The notes under the pieces were generated by a model that saw only the letters and a program-made list of their open reading frames with translations, did no database searches and had not been told where the DNA came from. Positions 26,932 to 34,112 of a DNA stretch of 64,000 nucleotides are shown here, piece after piece. The DNA comes from Diplonema japonicum (taxonomy: Eukaryota; Protista; Euglenozoa: Diplonemea), in assembly GCA_964019335.1 (NCBI GenBank), contig OZ025703.1, positions 124,001 to 188,000 on the forward strand, given 5' to 3'. Made by a program: the position numbers and the translations under genes. How positions within the stretch are numbered: position 1 is the first letter of the stretch; each line of letters begins with the position of its first letter.

Positions 26932-27692
26932 TAAGCTTTCTGTTTCTTTTTTTTTTTTTTGGGTTCCCTCCGACTAAAATGAAAGAATTTTTTTTTTGAC
27001 ATTTTTTTTTTTATTCATACATACCCCCTTTCTGTGAGTGAAAGGGGAGAAGGAAAAAAAAAAAAAAAAAAAAAAACCTAGTTTTTTATTCTTCCCCCTC
27101 TCCCCTTTTTAAAAAAAATAGAAATGGAAAGAACACTGGAAGAAAAAAAAAAAAAAAAAAAAAAAAAGCACGAGCGAGTTCACCACGAGGGCATAAAGGC
27201 CTAACTTTGTCAGATCAATGTAAACTCATCGATTGCCTGCACTTTTTGCGCTCTTTTTCCGAAGAAGAAAGGTTCACTTGATGTGTGCTGTCCACTTTTT
27301 CTCTCCATTGTGTTTTGTTCATTTGTTTTAGCCTCCTTTTTTTTTTCCAATGTTTCATTTCACCCCCCCCCCTTTTTTTAACTGTAACAAAAACAAAAAA
27401 AAGGCGAGCTCAGTGATGCAACAGTCAACATAGTAGTCCTTTAGTCCTTTTCTTCAAAGTGTTTTTACCCCCTCCTTTTTTTTTTCCTATCTTTCTCACT
27501 TTCTTGTCCCCCCAACCACCTCCCGACTTCTTATTCTTCTTTTTTTTTTTTTTTTTCTTCTTTTTTTTAAAAAAAAAATTCCGTGATTGTTTGGGCTTTT
27601 TATTCTTTTTTTTAAAAACTGTCATGGCGAAAAAAAAAAAAAAAAAAAAAGTGGGGAGAGGAAGGAGGGGGAAAAAAAAAGAGAAAAAAAAA

Positions 27693-28893
27693 ATGTTTCA
27701 AGAAGAGAGGTTTGCAGATATGGAGGTGGACTTTGAGAGGGCGTTACCACCAGTATGGGCCAAAAAAAAAAATTTTTTTTTTAAAAAGAATATAAAAAAA
27801 AAAAAAAAAAAAAAAAAACAGGAACAAGTATCAAAACGAAATATCTGTTTCGACTACCAAAGCGGGAACTGCACGAGGGGGAACCTGTGCCCGTACAAAC
27901 ACAGTTTCACAAACAGAAGCAAGACACAGGACGAGGTATGCAAGTACTGGTTGCGAGGACTGTGCAAGATGGGCGTTGACTGCGAGTTCATCCACGAGTA
28001 CCAGATGACAAAAATACCGGAGTGCTTTTACTACCAAAGGTTCGGTGAGTGCAGCAACCCCGAGTGCGTCTTCCGTCACGTCTCAATGGACGATAAAGTC
28101 CCAGAGTGTGCCGCGTACCAAAGGGGCTTCTGCCGGTACGGTCCAAGGTGCAGGTTAAAACACGTTTTCCGCGAAGCGTGCCCCAACTACATGGCAGGAT
28201 TGTGCATTGAAGGTTCAAAGTGCAAACTAGGACACCCCAGCCTTAAACGCGTCACTGAAGAGGAAATCCGAGGCAGGCTAGCAAGAGGCGAAGCCATCGA
28301 GGAAGCAGGAGTGGAAGCATTGCAAAACCCGACAGGCGTGATTTGCCATAAATGCGGAGAGGTATTTTTTTTTTTTTTTTTTTTTTTTTTGGGGGGAAAA
28401 AAAAAAAAAAAAAAAAAAAAAAAAGCCTGGTCATATCGCACCTGAGTGCACGCAGCACGGGGGTATGAACAAGGTGCAGCGGGTCATGATTGAGATTATG
28501 CAAACCGTTCAGGAGCCCAACGGTGTTGGTTGTTACCATTGTGCTGAGGAGGACCATTTGTCGCACGAGTGTCCCAAGAAAAGGGAACGGTACATGCAGA
28601 ACAGGGAAGGCTTTCAAAACGCCCGAGGCGACTTCAACGCGGAGGAGCGACAACGTCCTCGGTGCTTCCGATGCGGGGAGGAAGGGCACATCAACCGCGA
28701 CTGCCCTCTCGTCCTTGCAGAGCGAGCAAAGGGGCTCATCCCCAACATGGGTACTCGCCCCGCTCCGGCAGCACCTCCTCGTCCTATATTATCCGAAGGC
28801 CCTCGCGCTGAAGGAGCAGCAGCTGGAACCTTCTACACCCCGCCTGCCTACACCAATCCTGCGAATATACCCGCGCCTCCAGGAATGCGTTGA
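27693..28893 (+). CDS. CPSF4: Cleavage and polyadenylation specificity factor 30 kDa (5 CCCH + 3 CCHC); introns 27753-27821 and 28362-28425
   Basis: VCKYWLRGLCKMG..CEFIHEY..TKIPEC.YY..FGECSNPEC.FRH signature. Splicing restores the knuckle CHKCGE|PGHIAPEC. Confidence 0.95.
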
Positions 28894-29080
28894 TGAAAAG
28901 TTGAGTTATAAGAGAGACAGTGTGTTCTTTAAGAAAAAAAAAGATTTTTTTTTCCCCATAGTTTTTTTTTTTTTTTTTTTTTTTTTTCTACGCACAAAAA
29001 AAAGAGGAAAAAAAATAAGGAGAAAAAAAGAAGAAGAAAAAAAGGAGAAAAAAAAACACAACGGCAAACCTATTCTCCCG

Positions 29081-31675
29081 ATGGCGGTCCCAACGGGGAC
29101 GACGGATGGAGACCCACCCGCCCCTGCTAAGAAATCGAAGACCGGTGGACGGTGCAGGACAAGGGAGGCGAAACGGAGATACCTGCTGAAATCGAAGGTG
29201 GTGAACGTCACCAACGAAGAACAAGAACGCCAAAAAAAAAGGGTGGCGCAGCTGGAGAAGGAACTGGAAAGGGCGAAGGAGCTGCTGACCGCAATGGACG
29301 AGGCTCTCGAGGTGAAAAACCTGGCTCTAGTGGAAGACGAGGCGAGCAGCACACCACCACAATCCATCCTCCCAGATCTAGAAGAAACGGAAGAACACCC
29401 CGCACCCGTCCAATCGATGGTCTTCCGAGACAACTGTGATCTACCACCAATCACCTATCAAAACTGGATTGACGATGATGACGACGATGAATTCCCTGCA
29501 TTCCCTTGCCCGGTGCTTGACATCGAACCAAATCTTCCGGACTCCGACGATGGAGGACAGCAAGCATGCCAACCTCTGGAACGTCCGCTCGACCAGCTAA
29601 TCGTCGGGATCATTGGCCACGTTGCTCACGGAAAATCCAGCGTTGTCAAAATGCTCACAGGGAAGTCCACCATGGTCTTCCGCGAGGAACGCCTGGCAAA
29701 CTCCACCATCAAGCTAGGGTACGCCGATGCGTGTATATACAGATCATTGCACACGCTTCGCGGGAGGAGAAGGTACTTCATGCAAGGAGGGTCTGTGGTG
29801 GACACGAACCCAAAACATCCCGAAACAGACGAAGCGTGCGAATTCGTCCGGAAAATCTCATTTGTAGACTGTCCCGGCCACGACAAGTACATCGACATCA
29901 TGATAGCAGGTGCTGCCGTTATGGATGCCGCATTGGTGGTGGTTGCCGCGAACGAGGATTTCCCGCAACCGCAAATGATGGAACATTTGCAAGCTATCCG
30001 GCAAGCGTCCATCCGTTCTGACCAGATTGTTGTTGTTCACAATAAAGTTGATCTTGTGGGCCCCACCGCTGTTGAACACTTGCCTTCAATACGGAGTCTT
30101 GTCGGTCAAGACGCAGCGGTCGTTCCTTGCTGTGCTGTTCAGTCGGGCAATAAGGAAAGTATTATTGAAGCCCTTGTTCACCTCGACTCCCCTGAACGGG
30201 ATACGACGTCTTCCACGGTGCTCCAGATCATCCGCTCTTTTGATATTAACAAAAAGGGTAAGTCTACATCGCTTGGCGGTGTTCTTGGCGGTGCGGTTTT
30301 AAAGGGTCATTTGAAGCTCAACGACACTATCACGCTGTACCCCGGCCTGCGGCAGGACAACGGTGTTTACAACCCCATCAAAGCCAAAATCGTGTCGTTG
30401 ACATCGGAGGGCATTTCTGTTACAGAAGCCCGTCCTGGGGCTTTGATCGGTGTTGGAACCAATATCCCCGCGAATCTTTCGCAAGCTGACAGGTTGGTCG
30501 GGCAGATCGGTGGTATTCTAGGTGAGACAGTCGAGGTTTTCACGAACAAAATGCAAATCATCGAAATCGACCGCAGGAGAGACACGAAAGGGATAAAGGT
30601 GAAGCGACACAAAAACGGGGAATACGCGCTGTTAATGGCAGGTCCGACAAAAATCGTGGCGAAGGTGGTGCATTTTGGAAAGCACGCGCTTGAAATCGTC
30701 CTTTCCAAAGCGGTAGCTGTCACGCCAATGCAACGTGTGGCGATCTCTCGAAAGGATTCCACCGGCTGGCGTATTGTAGCCTGGGGAACTATCAAGACTT
30801 CAATGGCCTTACCGACACCTTATTTGAAGTACGACCAAGTAAACCCATCGAGAAAGCACCAGTACGTCTCCTCGGAAAATGCTTTACAAGCGTTCTATCG
30901 AAGCGAAATTGAAGATGATCCGTCACTGTCTGATTTCAACGGAGACTTAAAGACAAGACATCCTGTTGCGGAACCCATTCCATCTTTACCGGTTCATATG
31001 CATTCGGTTCCTTCAAATGAAATATTTAACGTGTACACGGATTCTGATGATGGTGACGAGGCAGGTTTGAAGAAACGGTTCAAAAAGAAAAGGAAGAAGA
31101 TCAAAGTCCGGCCTGCAGCTTCTGACTCCGACGTGGAGCCCGTTCCTCTTCAGGGTGATGCGGCGTATGCTGGGTTACTTTATCAAGCTTTGGATAATAT
31201 TACTGTGAAAGATGCGTTGGCTAAACCTTTCCGACTACCGCCACCAAGGGTAATCAAATTAACAAGGCATTGCGTTGGCATTGCAAATTTCGACGCGATT
31301 GTGAAAAATTTAAACCGGTCGCAGGAGCATATCCGGACGTTTATAGGAGTGGAGCTGTCTACCACTACCTCTGTTGACCAAAATGGGTGTCTTATTCTAG
31401 GGAAGAACTTCAAGTCCAGCAACGTTGAGGTTGTACTCAGAAAGTACGCGTGGCTGTACGTTATTTGCCTCATGTGTAGTTCTGGGACGAATCTTGAACG
31501 GGCTGATCGTGGAATCTTTGAATTGCAGTGTCCTAAATGTCTCGCCATCCGCTCTGTCCCAGCACAACAGGCTACTTTGTACGCCCCTGCGACGAAAAAA
31601 AGCAGAAGGCGGGTGAGGGATGAGTTGCGTAAGGCAACGGACACGGAAGAGAAACCAAAAGAGAAGAAGAAGTAA
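29081..31675 (+). CDS. Single-chain fusion of eIF2gamma (GTPase, domains II and III) and eIF2beta (K-box, core, Zn ribbon), 864 aa
   Basis: GIIGHVAHGKS, TIKLGYAD, SFVDCPGHD, AVMDAAL, NKVD, IIRSFDINK, GGVLGG, PGALIGVGT, WRIVAWGTI (gamma); KKRFKKKRKK, YAGLL, LPPPRV, ANFDAIVKNLNRSQEHI..F...EL, YVICLMC...CPKC...RSV (beta). No stop or intron between them. Confidence 0.9.
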   Translation: MAVPTGTTDGDPPAPAKKSKTGGRCRTREAKRRYLLKSKVVNVTNEEQERQKKRVAQLEKELERAKELLTAMDEALEVKNLALVEDEASSTPPQSILPDLEETEEHPAPVQSMVFRDNCDLPPITYQNWIDDDDDDEFPAFPCPVLDIEPNLPDSDDGGQQACQPLERPLDQLIVGIIGHVAHGKSSVVKMLTGKSTMVFREERLANSTIKLGYADACIYRSLHTLRGRRRYFMQGGSVVDTNPKHPETDEACEFVRKISFVDCPGHDKYIDIMIAGAAVMDAALVVVAANEDFPQPQMMEHLQAIRQASIRSDQIVVVHNKVDLVGPTAVEHLPSIRSLVGQDAAVVPCCAVQSGNKESIIEALVHLDSPERDTTSSTVLQIIRSFDINKKGKSTSLGGVLGGAVLKGHLKLNDTITLYPGLRQDNGVYNPIKAKIVSLTSEGISVTEARPGALIGVGTNIPANLSQADRLVGQIGGILGETVEVFTNKMQIIEIDRRRDTKGIKVKRHKNGEYALLMAGPTKIVAKVVHFGKHALEIVLSKAVAVTPMQRVAISRKDSTGWRIVAWGTIKTSMALPTPYLKYDQVNPSRKHQYVSSENALQAFYRSEIEDDPSLSDFNGDLKTRHPVAEPIPSLPVHMHSVPSNEIFNVYTDSDDGDEAGLKKRFKKKRKKIKVRPAASDSDVEPVPLQGDAAYAGLLYQALDNITVKDALAKPFRLPPPRVIKLTRHCVGIANFDAIVKNLNRSQEHIRTFIGVELSTTTSVDQNGCLILGKNFKSSNVEVVLRKYAWLYVICLMCSSGTNLERADRGIFELQCPKCLAIRSVPAQQATLYAPATKKSRRRVRDELRKATDTEEKPKEKKK

Positions 31676-31684
31676 ACTGGGAGG

Positions 31685-31715
<31 letters not shown>

Positions 31716-32459
31716 CATATCCACGTCCTCTTTTTGCGGCATTTTCTTTTTGATCTGCGAAAGAATTGTGGGAAGTTTTTTTTTTTTTCTTTTTTTTTTC
31801 TTTTAAAGGAGGAATGAAACTAGCCAAAGAAAAAAAGAAAAAAAAAAACTAAGAAAAAAAAAATAAGATGAAGGAATGTAGACATGCTAGACAAGGAACC
31901 TCTTAGGTAATTATTTCACAAAACGAAGGGGGGGAAATATTATAACTTGCCCATTTTTTTCACTCTTTCCCCCCCCCCCCTCCAAATGTGGGCGAATCTT
32001 CCTATCCTGATTTCCCCATTCTTTTCCCTTGCATAGGACTCCTAAAGCGAATACGGAGAAGAAAGAGGTGACCAACGACACCGCATGTCCATTTTCTTGT
32101 GGTTTTTTTCCCCCCCCTTTTTTTTTTAAAATTTCCTTCCCCCTCCTCAGCGACGGACTCCCGGTGACGGTAGCAGACTGCAACTGAGTTAAAAAGAAGT
32201 ACATGACAACGCAATAAAGAAAAAAGAACCATAGAAAGGCAAGAAAACCAGTTTAAAAAAAAAAAAACGTACCCACCTCTCTTTACAATGGAGGAAGGTC
32301 ATCTAATAGTGACGGTTATACAAATAAATTCACATGCCCAGACAGCAGACGATGTCCCCCCCCCTTTTTTTTCTCTTTTACAGTTTTTTCCTCCTTGCAC
32401 ATCGCCTACTTGTACCATGTATGACCAACCACCAACACAACTAGCTACATACAAATAAA

Positions 32460-34112
32460 ATGAGGTCTGCCATGTTCATGGCCCTGGTGGCTGCGTCCGC
32501 CGGGTCGCTCGTGGAGGTCCACGAGCCCTCGATGATCCCTTCGGGGTGGAGGGCCATCTCCGAGAAGGTGAACGCTGACGGGAAGTTCCGTGTCACCGTG
32601 GGTGTGAAGAGGTCTAACAAGGCTGCTCTTGACAAGATCTTCTCTGAGGTGTCCAACCCCCAGAGCGCTAACTACCTGCAGTACCCTTCCTACGCCGAGA
32701 TGGGTGACATTGTGAGGCCCTCTGCTGAGCACACCAGGATTGTGAAGGAATGGCTCAGCACCAACGGTGTCGAGGTGACCAAGGTGCACCCCCACGGGGA
32801 CTACATCCACGCCGAGGCCACCGTTGCCCAGATCCAGAAGATGGCCAACGGTGAGTTCATGACCTACGAGCACACCAGCGGTGCCAAGATCTGGCGTCTC
32901 ACCAGCGGTGTCCGCGTGCCTGCTGTGGTTGCCGCCGCCATCGACACTTTCGCTGGGTTCCACGGTTTCCCCCTCAACCCCATTGTTGTTGACAAGAAGC
33001 TGAAGGAGAAGCTCCAGGCCGCTGGTAAGGTCGACCCTGCCGTTTTCAGGAAGACCTACAACGTGACTGCTGTCCCCAAGACCGGCAAGCAGAACATCCA
33101 GGCCATCGCCCAGTTCCAGGGCCAGTACGTCGATGACAAGGACCTCGCTGACTTCTGCACCAAGTACGACGCGGGCTCCGACTGCAAGATCTCCAAGTAC
33201 ATCGGGAAGAACGAGCAGCAGCCGGGCATCGAGTCCATGCTCGACACCGAGTACATCATGTCCCTCAGCAACACCGCCGAGACCTGGGTGTACTCCTACC
33301 CCAACTTCGACTTCTGCGCGGACCTTGGTACCTTCGGGTCCGATGTGACCGGCGAGTCGACCTTCCCGTACAGCATCAGCATCAGCTACGGGAGCCAGAA
33401 GATCGACTACTGCTCGAAGACCATCACGACCCGTCTCTCCGACGACATCCAGAAGATGGGGACCATGGGGATCACCGTCATGATCTCCTCTGGTGACGAC
33501 GGCAGTGGTGGCGAGACCAGGCAGGGCAGCAACGGTGGCAAGCTGTCGCCCTCGTTCCCCGCATCCATCCCCACCTGCGTCGCTGTGGGGTCCACCTACT
33601 GGCTCGAGGGTACCACCGGTGAGCAGCAGGCGACCACCCAGTTCGGGTCGGGCGGTGGCTTCTCGTACGACTTCCCCGTCCCCAGCTACCAGGGCCAGCA
33701 GGTGCAGAGCTACATGTCCAACGTGAAGAAGCCCAACTCTCAGTACGCCACTGGTAGGGGTACCCCTGATGTGTCCACCCTTGGTGAGTCCTTCACTGTT
33801 GTTGAGGGTGGCTCCGCCATCGCTGTCGGTGGAACCTCGTGCAGCTCCCCTTCGTTCGCTGGTCTCGTGACCCTCCTGAACGAGGCTTGCATTGCCGAGA
33901 GCGGCAAGACCCTTGGGTTCGCCAACCCTCTGTTCTACCAGAACCCCCACATGTTCACCGACATCGTGAAGGGCACCAACGCCATCGGGGAGAACAGGGC
34001 CGCCGGTTGGGAGGCCATCAAGGGTTGGGATGCGTCCACCGGTCTCGGGACACCCAACTTCGGCTACATGCTGACCGTCGTTAAGAACGCCTGCAAGAAC
34101 GCCGCGCACTAA
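32460..34112 (+). CDS. Secreted/lysosomal sedolisin (S53, tripeptidyl-peptidase I-like)
   Basis: Signal peptide, pro-domain (EVSNPQSANYLQY), ExxLD, SSGDDG, GGTSCSSP, DIVKGTN and GWDASTGLGTPN motifs; very high GC3. Confidence 0.93.
   Translation: MRSAMFMALVAASAGSLVEVHEPSMIPSGWRAISEKVNADGKFRVTVGVKRSNKAALDKIFSEVSNPQSANYLQYPSYAEMGDIVRPSAEHTRIVKEWLSTNGVEVTKVHPHGDYIHAEATVAQIQKMANGEFMTYEHTSGAKIWRLTSGVRVPAVVAAAIDTFAGFHGFPLNPIVVDKKLKEKLQAAGKVDPAVFRKTYNVTAVPKTGKQNIQAIAQFQGQYVDDKDLADFCTKYDAGSDCKISKYIGKNEQQPGIESMLDTEYIMSLSNTAETWVYSYPNFDFCADLGTFGSDVTGESTFPYSISISYGSQKIDYCSKTITTRLSDDIQKMGTMGITVMISSGDDGSGGETRQGSNGGKLSPSFPASIPTCVAVGSTYWLEGTTGEQQATTQFGSGGGFSYDFPVPSYQGQQVQSYMSNVKKPNSQYATGRGTPDVSTLGESFTVVEGGSAIAVGGTSCSSPSFAGLVTLLNEACIAESGKTLGFANPLFYQNPHMFTDIVKGTNAIGENRAAGWEAIKGWDASTGLGTPNFGYMLTVVKNACKNAAH

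What the first reader, a model, noticed from the sequence alone, without database searches (positions are those of the whole stretch)
29081..31675. Single-chain eIF2gamma-eIF2beta fusion: a candidate alternative initiation factor
Seen: one uninterrupted, intronless 864-aa ORF. It has a ~170-aa basic/coiled-coil/acidic leader, a complete eIF2gamma (~29590-30795, G1/G3/G4 intact), a ~90-aa linker, then eIF2beta (~31070-31560) with one Lys box, the gamma-binding helix (YAGLLYQAL) and an intact C4 Zn ribbon. Known: eIF2 is normally an alpha/beta/gamma heterotrimer from separate, highly conserved genes, and canonical beta has three Lys boxes that bind eIF5 and eIF2B. I know of no natural gamma-beta fusion. 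Inference: both halves are far more divergent than housekeeping orthologs, so this looks like a paralogous pre-assembled beta-gamma module. It might deliver Met-tRNAi with altered dependence on eIF2alpha phosphorylation/eIF2B, or act as a decoy.
Basis: partly seen in the sequence, partly recalled or inferred. Interest (0 to 1): 0.85.

Follow-up and report, generated by a model that had tools for sequence, protein, structure and literature searches.

The report
Single-chain eIF2 gamma-beta paralogue of diplonemids
This diplonemid gene really does encode translation factors eIF2-gamma and eIF2-beta as one expressed protein. It is an extra copy kept across diplonemids that has lost the residues needed to bind eIF2-alpha, so it may start protein synthesis outside the usual stress control; similar fusions are common in giant viruses.

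Summary
The ORF at 29081-31675 (+, 864 aa) carries a complete eIF2gamma followed by an eIF2beta with K-box, alpha1 helix, core and C4 ribbon.

- **Expression:** it is intronless. Single ~2.7-kb RNA contigs from two studies span the whole ORF, junction included.
- **Extra copy:** the genome also encodes canonical eIF2alpha, beta and gamma and two eIF5 genes.
- **Not unique:** orthologous fusions occur in at least eight other diplonemids. One is a GenBank Diplonema papillatum entry named only "subunit gamma". About 36 database protein clusters of a shorter gamma-beta fusion are of the giant-virus type.
- **New here:** the GTPase motifs, the switch-I Asn/Tyr and the beta-docking Val are kept. The Asp needed for eIF2alpha binding (yeast D403) is kept in all 45 other sequences aligned at that position, but is Pro, His or Ala in all eight Diplonemidae fusions. 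The alpha-binding loop varies in length only in this clade.
- **Origin:** a beta-tail motif shared only with diplonemid canonical eIF2beta points to an in-lineage origin. The gamma tree does not resolve it.

Best reading: an alpha-independent, single-chain Met-tRNAi carrier. This is inferred, not shown. I found no paper describing it. Verdict: a new variant of a known kind.

The parts
29081..31675 (+). Complete ORF of the eIF2gamma-eIF2beta fusion (864 aa plus stop), single copy in the genome
   Evidence: ORF list. Domain hits. Only two PF09173 loci exist in the genome, this one and the canonical gamma. The identical 864-aa protein is present in EukProt as P0121.
29062..31673 (+). Stretch covered without gap, joint or mismatch by single RNA contigs (2705 nt in X6, 2681 nt in X7) and one DNA contig (X2). 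This is the mRNA body.
   Evidence: table 8. X6 and X7 are RNA: their contigs lack the 64-nt CPSF30 intron, carry a spliced-leader tail at 32444, and have unequal depth between neighbouring genes.
29129..29197 (+). Conserved basic motif KKSKTGGRCRTREAKRRYLLKSK (aa 17-39) at the N terminus
   Evidence: Conserved as TGGRxRTREAKRR in the diplonemid orthologues and as RRRSGRVRTRAAAKR in Artemidia. Its function is unknown.
29162..29344 (+). Long helix, aa 28-88 (two DSSP helices, 28-41 and 45-88), likely a coiled coil
   Evidence: The AF2 model gives pLDDT 79-94 over blocks 31-80. Only weak coiled-coil-type Pfam noise was found.
29453..29506 (+). Acidic/aromatic segment TYQNWIDDDDDDEFPAFP (aa 125-142)
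   Evidence: The W plus acidic run is conserved in the orthologues. The model is disordered here. Any role as a partner of a K-box is my inference.
29591..30811 (+). eIF2gamma moiety (aa 171-577): G domain, domain II and domain III. Contains G1 29615-29638, switch I NSTIKLGY 29699-29722, G3 29867-29881, G4 30041-30052 and G5 30128-30142.
   Evidence: AF2 pLDDT is mostly above 90, and Foldseek finds e/aIF2gamma with TM (target) 0.73-0.88. Motif alignment.
30236..30280 (+). Counterpart of the eIF2alpha-binding loop (yeast eIF2gamma 320-335): SFDINKKGKSTSLGG. It is 2 aa shorter than the canonical loop, and its length varies only in the diplonemid fusions.
   Evidence: Alignment of 56 gamma sequences. 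Role of the loop from PMC8844851.
30455..30475 (+). GTNIPAN, the counterpart of canonical GTK-IDP. The Asp equivalent to yeast D403 (eIF2alpha contact) is replaced by Pro, and K401 by Asn.
   Evidence: Asp is present in all 45 other sequences aligned here (13 named eukaryotic, 4 unlabelled, 12 archaeal, 15 virus-type gamma-beta fusions, P0137), including P0125, where the column is shifted by one. It is P/H/A in all 8 Diplonemidae fusions. D403's role is taken from PMC8844851.
30812..31159 (+). Low-confidence region (aa 578-693) that is really the N-terminal tail of the beta moiety. It holds LQAFYRSE (30884-30907), SLSDFNGDLK (30923-30952) and the single K-box LKKRFKKKRKKIKV (31067-31108).
   Evidence: AF2 pLDDT is below 50 except for helices at 598-623. 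The K-box aligns with the last K-box of canonical eIF2beta. Among 372 proteins held, the motif [TS]LExFYxxLK occurs only in diplonemid canonical eIF2beta and in the fusions.
31160..31585 (+). eIF2beta core: gamma-docking helix alpha1 AAYAGLLYQALDNI (31160-31201), alpha/beta domain, and C4 zinc ribbon C796/C799/C817/C820 (31466-31540)
   Evidence: Pfam PF01873 at 717-820. PDB eIF2beta hit at 715-844. The four Cys are invariant in 40 fusions. AF2 pLDDT is about 80 for the helix and 93-97 for the core. It groups with eIF2beta, not eIF5.
31592..31672 (+). Basic C-terminal tail (TKKSRRRVRDELRK...KEKKK)
   Evidence: Read directly from the sequence. [quoted passage not shown] That it does the same here is inferred.

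Best explanation
The gene encodes a diplonemid-specific extra copy of eIF2 in which the GTPase subunit (gamma) and a full eukaryote-type beta subunit are one polypeptide. The beta part has its K-box, docking helix, core, zinc ribbon and basic tail. An N-terminal basic motif, a long helix and an acidic segment precede the gamma part.

Shown:
- It is a real, single-copy, intronless gene.
- It is transcribed as one mRNA.
- It is conserved across Diplonemea alongside the canonical eIF2alpha, beta and gamma genes.

Inferred mechanism:
- The beta helix docks in cis on the gamma G domain.
- The protein binds GTP and Met-tRNAi like eIF2. It keeps G1-G5, the switch-I Asn, the Tyr that in yeast affects Met-tRNAi binding, and the beta-docking Val.
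- It does not bind eIF2alpha. The invariant Asp and the loop of the alpha-binding surface are lost only in this clade.
- It would therefore form an alpha-less ternary complex that escapes control by eIF2alpha phosphorylation.
- Its one K-box leaves it able to meet W2-domain partners such as eIF5 or eIF2B-epsilon.

The hemistasiid orthologues carry eIF5-type GAP domains in the same chain. This fits a self-contained initiation module.

The beta half most likely arose from the lineage's own eIF2beta. The origin of the gamma half is unresolved.
For: Reality and expression:
- ORF and domains.
- Single RNA contigs from two studies cover 29062-31673 with no joint.
- The identical protein is in EukProt.

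Extra copy:
- Canonical gamma, beta, alpha and two eIF5 genes lie at other loci.
- The canonical gamma is 70-79% identical to other eukaryotes' gamma. The fused one is about 38-40%.

Conservation:
- Orthologues occur in D. ambulator, Flectonema, Rhynchopus, D. papillatum, Lacrimia, Artemidia, Hemistasia and two ENA assemblies.
- They form one clade with 98/99 support.
- Against D. ambulator, gamma is 79% and beta 77% identical. The N-terminus is 49% and the linker 46%.

Activity:
- G1, G3, G4 and G5, N207/Y214 (yeast N135/Y142) and the V281 equivalent are kept.
- The AF2 model has the gamma core above pLDDT 90, the beta core at 93-97 and the alpha1 helix near 80, with pTM 0.66.

Alpha independence:
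- The D403-equivalent Asp is kept in all 45 other sequences aligned there and lost in all 8 Diplonemidae fusions.
- The alpha loop has a fixed length in nearly all other sequences (one viral row is 3 aa longer, one 1 aa longer) and varies widely only here.
- The roles of D403, loop 320-335 and V281 come from PMC8844851.
- A yeast-beta/archaeal-gamma dimer binds Met-tRNA as well as the trimer (Kd 55 vs 87 nM). A yeast strain fully lacking eIF2alpha has been built (PMC3553985).

Cis-GAP relatives: Hemistasia has eIF5NTD-gamma-eIF5NTD-beta with YRYRMP motifs.

Endogenous beta: the motif TLExFYxxLK is shared only with diplonemid canonical eIF2beta.
Against: - No biochemical datum exists. GTP binding, tRNA binding, ribosome association and lack of alpha binding are all inferred from sequence.
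- Loss of one contact Asp and a variable loop do not prove that alpha cannot bind.
- Hemistasia appears to keep the Asp (GLDPS).
- Artemidia has degenerate G motifs (DCPGS, TKVD). So at least one lineage may use the protein without GTP hydrolysis, which fits a non-catalytic role.
- The role of the conserved N-terminal module is unexplained.
- I could not inspect coordinates, so cis-docking of the helix is not verified.
- RNA evidence is from assembled contigs, not raw reads. The 5' spliced-leader junction lies in a masked repeat (28928-29061) and was not seen.
Confidence: 0.55

Rival explanations
1. Regulatory decoy. The protein does not deliver tRNA. It would instead hold back partners of canonical eIF2, such as eIF5 or eIF2B-epsilon through its K-box, or a site on the 40S subunit. 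It might act as a dimer through the N-terminal helix.
For: - One K-box is conserved in 6 of 8 Diplonemidae fusions.
- An acidic/aromatic segment and a long helix are present.
- The Artemidia orthologue has degenerate GTPase motifs.
- The fusion is much more divergent than the housekeeping gamma.
Against: - All G motifs, the switch-I Asn, the Tyr linked to Met-tRNAi binding and the zinc ribbon are strictly kept in the Diplonemidae orthologues. A pure decoy need not keep them.
- The gamma and beta cores are the most constrained parts, at 77-79% identity.
Confidence: 0.15
2. Captured giant-virus gene. The fusion entered the diplonemid ancestor from a Nucleocytoviricota genome, where gamma-beta fusions are common, and was then domesticated.
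For: - The same gamma-then-beta order occurs in about 36 viral-type cluster representatives.
- P0131 is 98% identical to a protein encoded on an IMG/VR giant-virus MAG contig (GVMAG).
- The nearest ESM Atlas cluster is 100% viral.
- In the gamma tree the diplonemid clade lies outside canonical eukaryotes among deep, mostly viral lineages.
- Holding it with euglenozoan canonical gamma costs 33 lnL units, p-AU 0.051.
- The beta tree weakly joins it to P0132 and P0137, with SH-aLRT 84-86.
Against: - The beta N-terminal tail carries TLExFYxxLK and a K-box, as does the diplonemids' own eIF2beta.
- Viral fusions have short linkers, and only 3 of 36 have a K-box.
- Viral fusions keep the D403 Asp.
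- A clade of the fusion plus canonical eukaryotic gamma is not rejected: dlnL 5.9, p-AU 0.23.
- The clade sits on a long branch, so its deep position may be an artefact.
- Its neighbours are ordinary host genes, CPSF30 and a sedolisin-like gene.
Confidence: 0.12
3. A carrier with another job. The protein would be an eIF2gamma-like GTPase retargeted to a different ligand or place, for example another tRNA, re-initiation, or a nuclear or organellar role suggested by the basic N-terminal motif.
For: - The conserved N-terminal basic motif and helix have no counterpart in eIF2.
- The zinc knuckle of gamma is lost, and there are several deletions in the G domain and domain II.
Against: - Best matches are e/aIF2gamma by far. 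SelB and EF-Tu models score about 75 bits against 312.
- The eIF2_C domain III and an eIF2beta-type partner are present, rather than SelB-type domains.
- The Tyr linked to Met-tRNAi binding is kept.
Confidence: 0.1
4. Artefact: an assembly or gene-model chimera of two adjacent genes.
For: None found. It was considered only because eIF2 subunits are normally separate.
Against: - DNA contig X2 and RNA contigs X6 and X7 each span the junction with no differences.
- Independent transcriptome assemblies of other species give the same single ORF.
Confidence: 0.01

Closest known systems
Canonical heterotrimeric eIF2 (alpha/beta/gamma; yeast Sui2/Sui3/Gcd11)
   Same: - The gamma moiety has the G domain plus domains II and III, with G1-G5, the switch-I Asn/Tyr and the beta-docking Val.
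- The beta moiety has a K-box, alpha1 helix, alpha/beta core, C4 ribbon and basic tail.
   Different: - Beta is covalently joined to the C terminus of gamma.
- There is only one good K-box.
- The alpha-binding Asp (yeast D403) and loop are lost.
- The gamma zinc-knuckle Cys are lost.
- About 170 aa of N-terminal basic, helical and acidic sequence are added.
- Identity to canonical gamma is only about 38-40%.
Experimental alpha-less eIF2 (yeast strain lacking eIF2alpha; yeast-beta/archaeal-gamma dimer; PMC3553985)
   Same: A beta-gamma unit without alpha. In the yeast-type system such a dimer binds Met-tRNA with the trimer's affinity, helped by the N- and C-terminal extensions of beta. The fusion keeps both kinds of extension.
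   Different: That system is a laboratory construct of separate chains. This is a natural, single-chain, clade-wide paralogue kept next to a complete canonical eIF2. Its biochemistry is untested.
Gamma-beta fusion proteins of giant viruses (Nucleocytoviricota metagenome bins; e.g. P0128-P0133, IMG/VR GVMAG-M-3300018065-4)
   Same: The same domain order, gamma then beta, with intact G motifs and a C4 ribbon.
   Different: - The viral proteins are 535-660 aa and have no N-terminal extension.
- Their linkers are short (mostly 6-90 aa), and only 3 of 36 have a K-box.
- They keep the D403 Asp and a nearly fixed-length alpha loop.
- They do not group robustly with the diplonemid clade.
GenBank KAJ9457610.1 'Translation initiation factor 2 subunit gamma' of Diplonema papillatum (P0123/P0270, 1527 aa)
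   Same: An orthologue of the window protein, with the same gamma-beta architecture and the same D403 loss (TN-LHP).
   Different: It has a much longer N-terminal extension of about 780 aa. Its P-loop reads GCVSHGKT. The record names only the gamma part, and I found no paper discussing the fusion.
Hemistasiid orthologues (Hemistasia P0126, Artemidia P0256)
   Same: They are in the same clade by the gamma tree, at 98/99, and carry a C-terminal eIF2beta-type domain.
   Different: - They also carry eIF5-type N-terminal (GAP) domains in the same chain. Hemistasia has two with YRYRMP motifs, and Artemidia has one.
- Artemidia has degenerate G3, G4 and G5 motifs.

Membership tests
eIF2gamma / aIF2gamma (translational GTPase, eIF2_C type) | Three-domain fold: G domain, beta-barrel domain II, eIF2_C domain III | tested here: met
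   Pfam PF00009, PF03144 and PF09173. NCBIfam aIF2gamma 5.8e-93 over 172-572. AF2 plus Foldseek give TM (target) 0.73-0.88 to e/aIF2gamma structures.
eIF2gamma / aIF2gamma | Nucleotide-binding motifs G1 (GHVxHGKS/T), G3 (DxPGH), G4 (NKxD), G5 (SAx) | tested here: met
   GHVAHGKS, DCPGH, NKVD and CCAVQ, all aligned with the canonical motifs.
eIF2gamma / aIF2gamma | Switch-I Asn and the Tyr linked to Met-tRNAi binding (yeast N135, Y142 in NITIKLGY; residue roles recalled from my own knowledge) | tested here: met
   NSTIKLGY. N207 and Y214 are invariant in the diplonemid alignment.
eIF2gamma / aIF2gamma | eIF2alpha-binding surface: acidic residue at yeast D403, and loop 320-335 of fixed length (PMC8844851) | tested here: not met
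   The Asp is replaced by Pro (GTNIPAN) and the loop is 2 aa shorter. All 45 other aligned sequences keep the Asp. All 8 Diplonemidae fusions lack it.
eIF2gamma / aIF2gamma | Hydrophobic beta-docking residue (yeast V281 / human I222) | tested here: met
   Val in AAVVPCCAVQ aligns with I222 of APIIPISAQ.
eIF2gamma / aIF2gamma | Cys-rich zinc knuckle in the G domain | tested here: not met
   The segment reads LRG-RRRY-FMQ with no Cys, where archaea and most eukaryotes have CP..P.C.
eIF2gamma / aIF2gamma | GTP-dependent binding of Met-tRNAi and delivery to the 40S subunit | not testable with these tools
   Needs biochemistry.
eIF2beta (eukaryotic type) | PF01873 alpha/beta core plus C2-C2 zinc ribbon | tested here: met
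   PF01873 at 1.3e-18. C796/C799/C817/C820 are invariant in 40 fusions. It groups with eIF2beta and away from eIF5 and archaeal beta at SH-aLRT 93.
eIF2beta (eukaryotic type) | N-terminal alpha1 helix that docks on gamma (Y-x-x-L-L) | tested here: met
   AAYAGLLYQALDNI aligns with the canonical YTYPEILSRVYDRI. AF2 helix 694-705 has pLDDT near 80. Docking itself was not inspected.
eIF2beta (eukaryotic type) | Three lysine boxes in the N-terminal tail | tested here: not met
   One clear K-box (663-676) aligns with the last canonical K-box. An upstream box is degenerate here (SLSDFNGDLKTRHP), though Flectonema has LEQFYASLKKKSK.
Giant-virus gamma-beta fusion family | Compact protein (about 535-660 aa) with a short K-box-less linker, no N-terminal extension, and the alpha-binding Asp kept | tested here: not met
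   The window protein has 864 aa, a 170-aa N-terminal extension and a 110-aa linker with a K-box, and its Asp is lost. It is not nested in the viral clades.
eIF5 (GAP) | N-terminal domain with the Arg-finger motif YRYKMP | tested here: not met
   The C-terminal domain of the window protein lacks the motif and groups with eIF2beta. Only the hemistasiid orthologues carry such domains.

The most novel reading that the evidence does not exclude
Diplonemids run a second, self-contained initiation pathway. A single-chain eIF2 beta-gamma cannot bind eIF2alpha, so it keeps loading Met-tRNAi on 40S subunits when canonical eIF2 is shut down by alpha phosphorylation. In hemistasiids the same chain also carries its own eIF5-type GAP domains. 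Giant viruses would have reached the same solution independently, with gamma-beta and even alpha-beta-gamma single chains, to escape host translational shut-off.
Probability: 0.3. Interest if true: 0.85.

Novelty: new variant of a known kind. Interest (0 to 1): 0.66.

Why it matters
eIF2 is treated as an obligate heterotrimer, and its alpha subunit is the hub of the integrated stress response. This would be a natural beta-gamma chain that is conserved and expressed yet has shed the alpha-binding determinants, in one of the most abundant groups of marine protists. Until now alpha-less eIF2 has only been an engineered yeast construct.

It offers a direct handle on several questions:
- How much of initiation needs alpha and eIF2B?
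- How do paralogous initiation factors partition mRNAs in trans-splicing organisms?
- Why do giant viruses so often encode fused eIF2 subunits?

I recall that genetic transformation has been established in Diplonema papillatum (own knowledge, not checked here). If so, the prediction can be tested at the bench.

It also shows that current annotation, which names the protein 'subunit gamma', hides the architecture.

Tried and rejected
The genomic context of the ENA and viral homologues could not be read.
- **The word-index search with the beta part alone found nothing**.
- **Literature:** seven full-text searches and two giant-virus papers that I read for eIF2. None described a gamma-beta fusion in diplonemids or giant viruses. 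The giant-virus translation-factor paper treats beta and gamma separately.
- **The search of earlier findings by words** gave nothing.
- **Gamma phylogeny** (FastTree, quick and careful IQ-TREE) could not place the long-branched diplonemid clade.
  - Held with euglenozoan canonical gamma: p-AU 0.051.
  - Held with all canonical eukaryotic gamma: p-AU 0.23.
  - So neither an old eukaryotic paralogue nor a viral source is excluded by gamma alone.
- **The beta tree** (145 columns) is mostly unresolved.
- **Canonical gamma exons were not joined.** The gene (L001) is split by T-run/A-run introns, so only the exon-2 ORF, taken by reference, went into the trees.
- **The AF2 output gives no coordinates or PAE,** so cis-docking of the beta helix could not be checked.
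- **The 5' spliced-leader junction** of the mRNA falls in a repeat that read laying masks (28928-29061).
- **Rejected readings:**
  - SelB/eEFSec: far weaker scores and the wrong C-terminal domains.
  - eIF5-type C-terminal domain.
  - Assembly chimera.


Full report
**1. The observation**

The frame 29081-31675 (+) is open for 864 codons.

- *Start codon:* the mechanical ORF list extends the frame upstream to a TTG at 28490. That stretch reads through the 3' end of the neighbouring CPSF30 gene and through long T and A tracts. There is no ATG between those tracts and 29081, and every orthologue aligns from this Met.
- *Gamma part:* Pfam finds GTP_EFTU (174-367), GTP_EFTU_D2 (399-462) and eIF2_C (505-571). 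NCBIfam's aIF2gamma model covers 172-572 at 5.8e-93. Human eIF2gamma in PDB matches at 2.8e-72.
- *Beta part:* Pfam finds eIF-5_eIF-2B at 717-820. The NCBIfam aIF2beta model covers 694-826 at 5e-18. Human eIF2beta in PDB matches at 9.5e-15.
- *Structure model:* an AlphaFold2 model built on 40 fusion sequences has mean pLDDT 77.4 and pTM 0.66. The gamma core is mostly above 90, the beta core 93-97 and the beta alpha1 helix about 80. There is a confident long helix at 28-88. Residues 1-25, 91-156 and most of 578-691 have low confidence.
- *Fold search:* Foldseek returns e/aIF2gamma structures with TM (target) 0.73-0.88.

The linker is about 110 aa, part of it belongs to beta, and the gamma zinc-knuckle cysteines are missing.

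**2. It is one expressed gene**

- *Which runs are RNA:* public runs of the same organism were laid on 28000-32600. Runs X6 and X7 come from two different studies. Their contigs skip exactly 64 nt at the T26-G6-A28 intron of CPSF30 (28362-28425). They carry the diplonemid-type spliced-leader tail AAGCTACAGTTTCTGTACTTTATT joined at 32444. Their depths also differ about 8-fold (X6) and 1.3-fold (X7) between neighbouring genes.
- *Junction covered:* in each of these runs a single contig (2705 and 2681 nt) covers 29062-31673 with no gap, joint or differing letter. So there is no intron and no trans-splicing or polyadenylation inside the junction. A DNA contig (X2) agrees.
- *Spurious loose ends:* the only 'loose ends' near 31080 are 18-21-nt matches of unrelated contigs to the Lys-box codons.
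- *Protein on record:* the identical 864-aa protein is already in EukProt.
- *Limits:* these are assembled contigs rather than raw reads. The 5' leader junction lies in a masked repeat.

**3. It is an extra copy**

- The genome is 62.5 Mb in 132 contigs, and the window is C56:124001-188000. It has only one other eIF2_C locus.
- That locus, on C73, is a canonical gamma split by T-run/A-run introns. Its exon ORFs are 70-79% identical to other eukaryotes' gamma.
- The fused gamma is only about 38-40% identical to canonical gamma.
- Three other PF01873 genes exist:
  - a canonical eIF2beta on C11, 92% identical to a diplonemid transcript;
  - a canonical eIF5 with a W2 domain on C41;
  - a second eIF5-family gene on C7 without a detectable W2 domain.
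- eIF2alpha has a single locus on C38.
Only its exon-2 ORF was used, by reference.

**4. It is not unique**

A search of 5.8 billion clustered proteins and a full HMMER pass over 1.84 billion representatives found the same architecture in these sequences:

- Diplonema ambulator (884 aa, 65-69% identity over 99% of the length)
- Flectonema neradi
- Rhynchopus euleeides
- Diplonema papillatum (1527 aa; GenBank KAJ9457610.1, named only 'Translation initiation factor 2 subunit gamma')
- Lacrimia lanifica
- two ENA assemblies
- the hemistasiids Artemidia motanka and Hemistasia phaeocysticola

So the organism is a diplonemid, and the fusion dates back at least to the common ancestor of Diplonemidae and Hemistasiidae. 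No kinetoplastid or euglenid fusion appeared among the top hits.

The same pass brought up about 36 further cluster representatives of 535-660 aa with gamma followed by beta.

- One of them, P0131, is 98% identical to a protein on an IMG/VR giant-virus MAG contig (GVMAG).
- The nearest ESM Atlas cluster has 154 members with PF00009, PF01873 and PF09173, and is 100% viral, Nucleocytoviricota.
- There are even single chains with all three subunits: beta-gamma-alpha (P0125, P0134) and gamma-alpha-beta (P0137).

I found no paper that describes either the diplonemid or the viral fusion.

**5. What distinguishes the diplonemid protein**

I aligned 56 gamma sequences: diplonemid fusions, canonical eukaryotes, 12 named archaea, viral fusions and triple fusions.

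*Kept in the Diplonemidae fusions:*
- G1, G3 (DCPGH), G4 (NKxD) and G5.
- The switch-I NxTIKLGY, holding the equivalents of yeast N135 and Y142. I recall the roles of these two residues from my own knowledge.
- The hydrophobic residue equivalent to yeast V281 / human I222, which contacts eIF2beta.

*Lost in the Diplonemidae fusions:*
- PMC8844851 states that eIF2alpha binds gamma through loop 320-335 and residues K401 and D403. It also states that the acidic character of D403 is conserved in all known IF2gamma sequences.
- The Asp is present in all 45 other sequences aligned at that position. These are 13 named eukaryotes including this genome's own gamma, 4 unlabelled gammas, 12 archaea, 15 virus-type gamma-beta fusions and P0137. 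P0125 also has it, shifted by one column.
- It is Pro, His or Ala in all eight Diplonemidae fusions. The window protein reads GTNIPAN against the canonical GTK-IDP.
- The loop has a nearly fixed length in all other sequences but ranges from about -10 to +5 residues in this clade.
- Hemistasia seems to keep the Asp. Artemidia has lost it and also has degenerate G motifs.

The alpha-binding surface has therefore decayed selectively, while the catalytic, tRNA-side and beta-docking features are under constraint. Identity to D. ambulator fits this pattern: gamma 79% and beta 77%, against 49% for the N-terminus and 46% for the linker.

**6. The beta half and its origin**

- *Alignment with canonical beta:* I aligned the region after gamma with canonical eIF2beta sequences. 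The K-box (663-676) aligns with the last canonical K-box. It is followed at the canonical distance by the docking helix, the core, the ribbon and a basic tail. The 'linker' is thus the N-terminal tail of a eukaryote-type beta.
- *Shared motif:* upstream lies the motif [T/S]LExFYxxLK. Flectonema has TLEQFYASLKKKSK, and the window has a decayed SLSDFNGDLK. Those 372 include 87 eIF2beta sequences from diverse eukaryotes and about 36 viral fusions. I read this as a shared derived character, meaning the beta half came from the lineage's own eIF2beta.
- *Viral fusions differ:* their linkers are mostly 6-90 aa, and a K-box occurs in only 3 of 36.
- *Gamma tree* (LG+C20 PMSF, 54 rows): the diplonemid fusions are one clade (98/99). 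Archaea are separate (100/99). This genome's canonical gamma sits with euglenids inside canonical eukaryotes. The fusion clade hangs on a long branch at an unresolved deep position.
- *AU tests:* holding the fusion clade with euglenozoan canonical gamma gives p = 0.051. Holding it with all canonical eukaryotic gamma gives p = 0.23.
- *Beta tree:* the domain is eIF2beta-type, not eIF5-type (SH-aLRT 93), but the tree is otherwise unresolved.

An in-lineage duplication and fusion followed by fast evolution is the most economical reading. Capture from a giant virus is not excluded for the gamma half.

**7. Mechanism**

*Shown:* the architecture, the expression, the conservation, the motif retention and the motif loss.

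*From the literature:*
- A beta-gamma dimer with yeast beta binds Met-tRNA as tightly as the trimer (Kd 55 vs 87 nM).
- The N- and C-terminal extensions of beta contribute to that binding.
- A yeast strain fully lacking eIF2alpha has been constructed (PMC3553985).

*Inferred:*
- The fusion is a GTP-dependent Met-tRNAi carrier with beta docked in cis.
- It does not bind eIF2alpha, so it is blind to eIF2alpha phosphorylation.
- The retained K-box suggests it still meets W2-domain factors such as eIF5 or eIF2B-epsilon.

*Consistent observations:*
- The Hemistasia orthologue is eIF5NTD-gamma-eIF5NTD-beta, with YRYRMP Arg-finger motifs.
- This genome has a spare eIF5-family gene.
- Both fit a module that brings or recruits its own GAP, but neither is evidence for it.

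*Unexplained:* the conserved N-terminal basic motif, the long helix (perhaps a dimerising coiled coil) and the acidic/aromatic segment.

*Rivals:* a decoy for eIF5 or eIF2B, a domesticated viral gene, or a retargeted carrier. An artefact is excluded.

**8. Verdict**

The finding is real. The claim of uniqueness fails, because the architecture is found across diplonemids and a shorter version is common in giant viruses. I class it as a new variant of a known kind and as undescribed in the literature I could search. Interest is moderate to high.

Noticed in passing
window 28362-28425 (CPSF30 gene 27459-28893, +): A 64-nt GT..AG intron made of T26-G6-A28. RNA contigs of runs X6 and X7 lack exactly these 64 nt: the genome gap is 79 nt and the contig gap 15 nt.
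   Followed up: partly
L001 (G000:C73:349380-352646) and L003 (G000:C11:253514-256843): The canonical eIF2gamma and eIF2beta genes are interrupted by the same kind of T-run/A-run insert. The genomic eIF2beta ORF has 284 aa against 260 aa in the transcript-derived orthologue P0286. The exons were not joined here.
   Followed up: partly
window 32444 (upstream of the sedolisin-like ORF 32460-34112, +): RNA contigs of two runs carry the loose 5' letters AAGCTACAGTTTCTGTACTTTATT joined at 32444. This looks like the spliced-leader acceptor site of that gene.
   Followed up: no
L005:931-1998 (-) = G000:C7:688057-691443: A second eIF5-family paralogue with an eIF5-type N-terminal domain (motif HYRYKM) but no detectable W2 domain. 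The canonical eIF5 with W2 is at L004 (C41). It could be a dedicated GAP for the fusion, but this was not tested.
   Followed up: partly
P0126 (Hemistasia phaeocysticola, 1187 aa) and P0256 (Artemidia motanka, 952 aa): The hemistasiid orthologues add eIF5-type GAP domains to the chain. Hemistasia is eIF5NTD-gamma-eIF5NTD-beta. Artemidia is gamma-eIF5NTD-beta, with degenerate G motifs (DCPGS, TKVD).
   Followed up: partly
P0125, P0134 (about 1140 aa) and P0137 (1057 aa), on metagenome contigs of about 4 kb: Single chains holding all three eIF2 subunits: beta-gamma-alpha (with S1 and EIF_2_alpha domains) and gamma-alpha-beta.
   Followed up: no
P0128-P0133 and about 30 further cluster representatives; L009 (IMG/VR GVMAG-M-3300018065-4): A large, diverse family of compact gamma-beta fusions (535-660 aa) attributed to Nucleocytoviricota. 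The giant-virus papers I read treat beta and gamma as separate factors.
   Followed up: partly
P0005 (Clastostelium recurvatum transcript, 613 aa): A canonical-type eIF2gamma with an internal repeat of the end of the G domain and domain II. This may be a transcript-assembly artefact.
   Followed up: no
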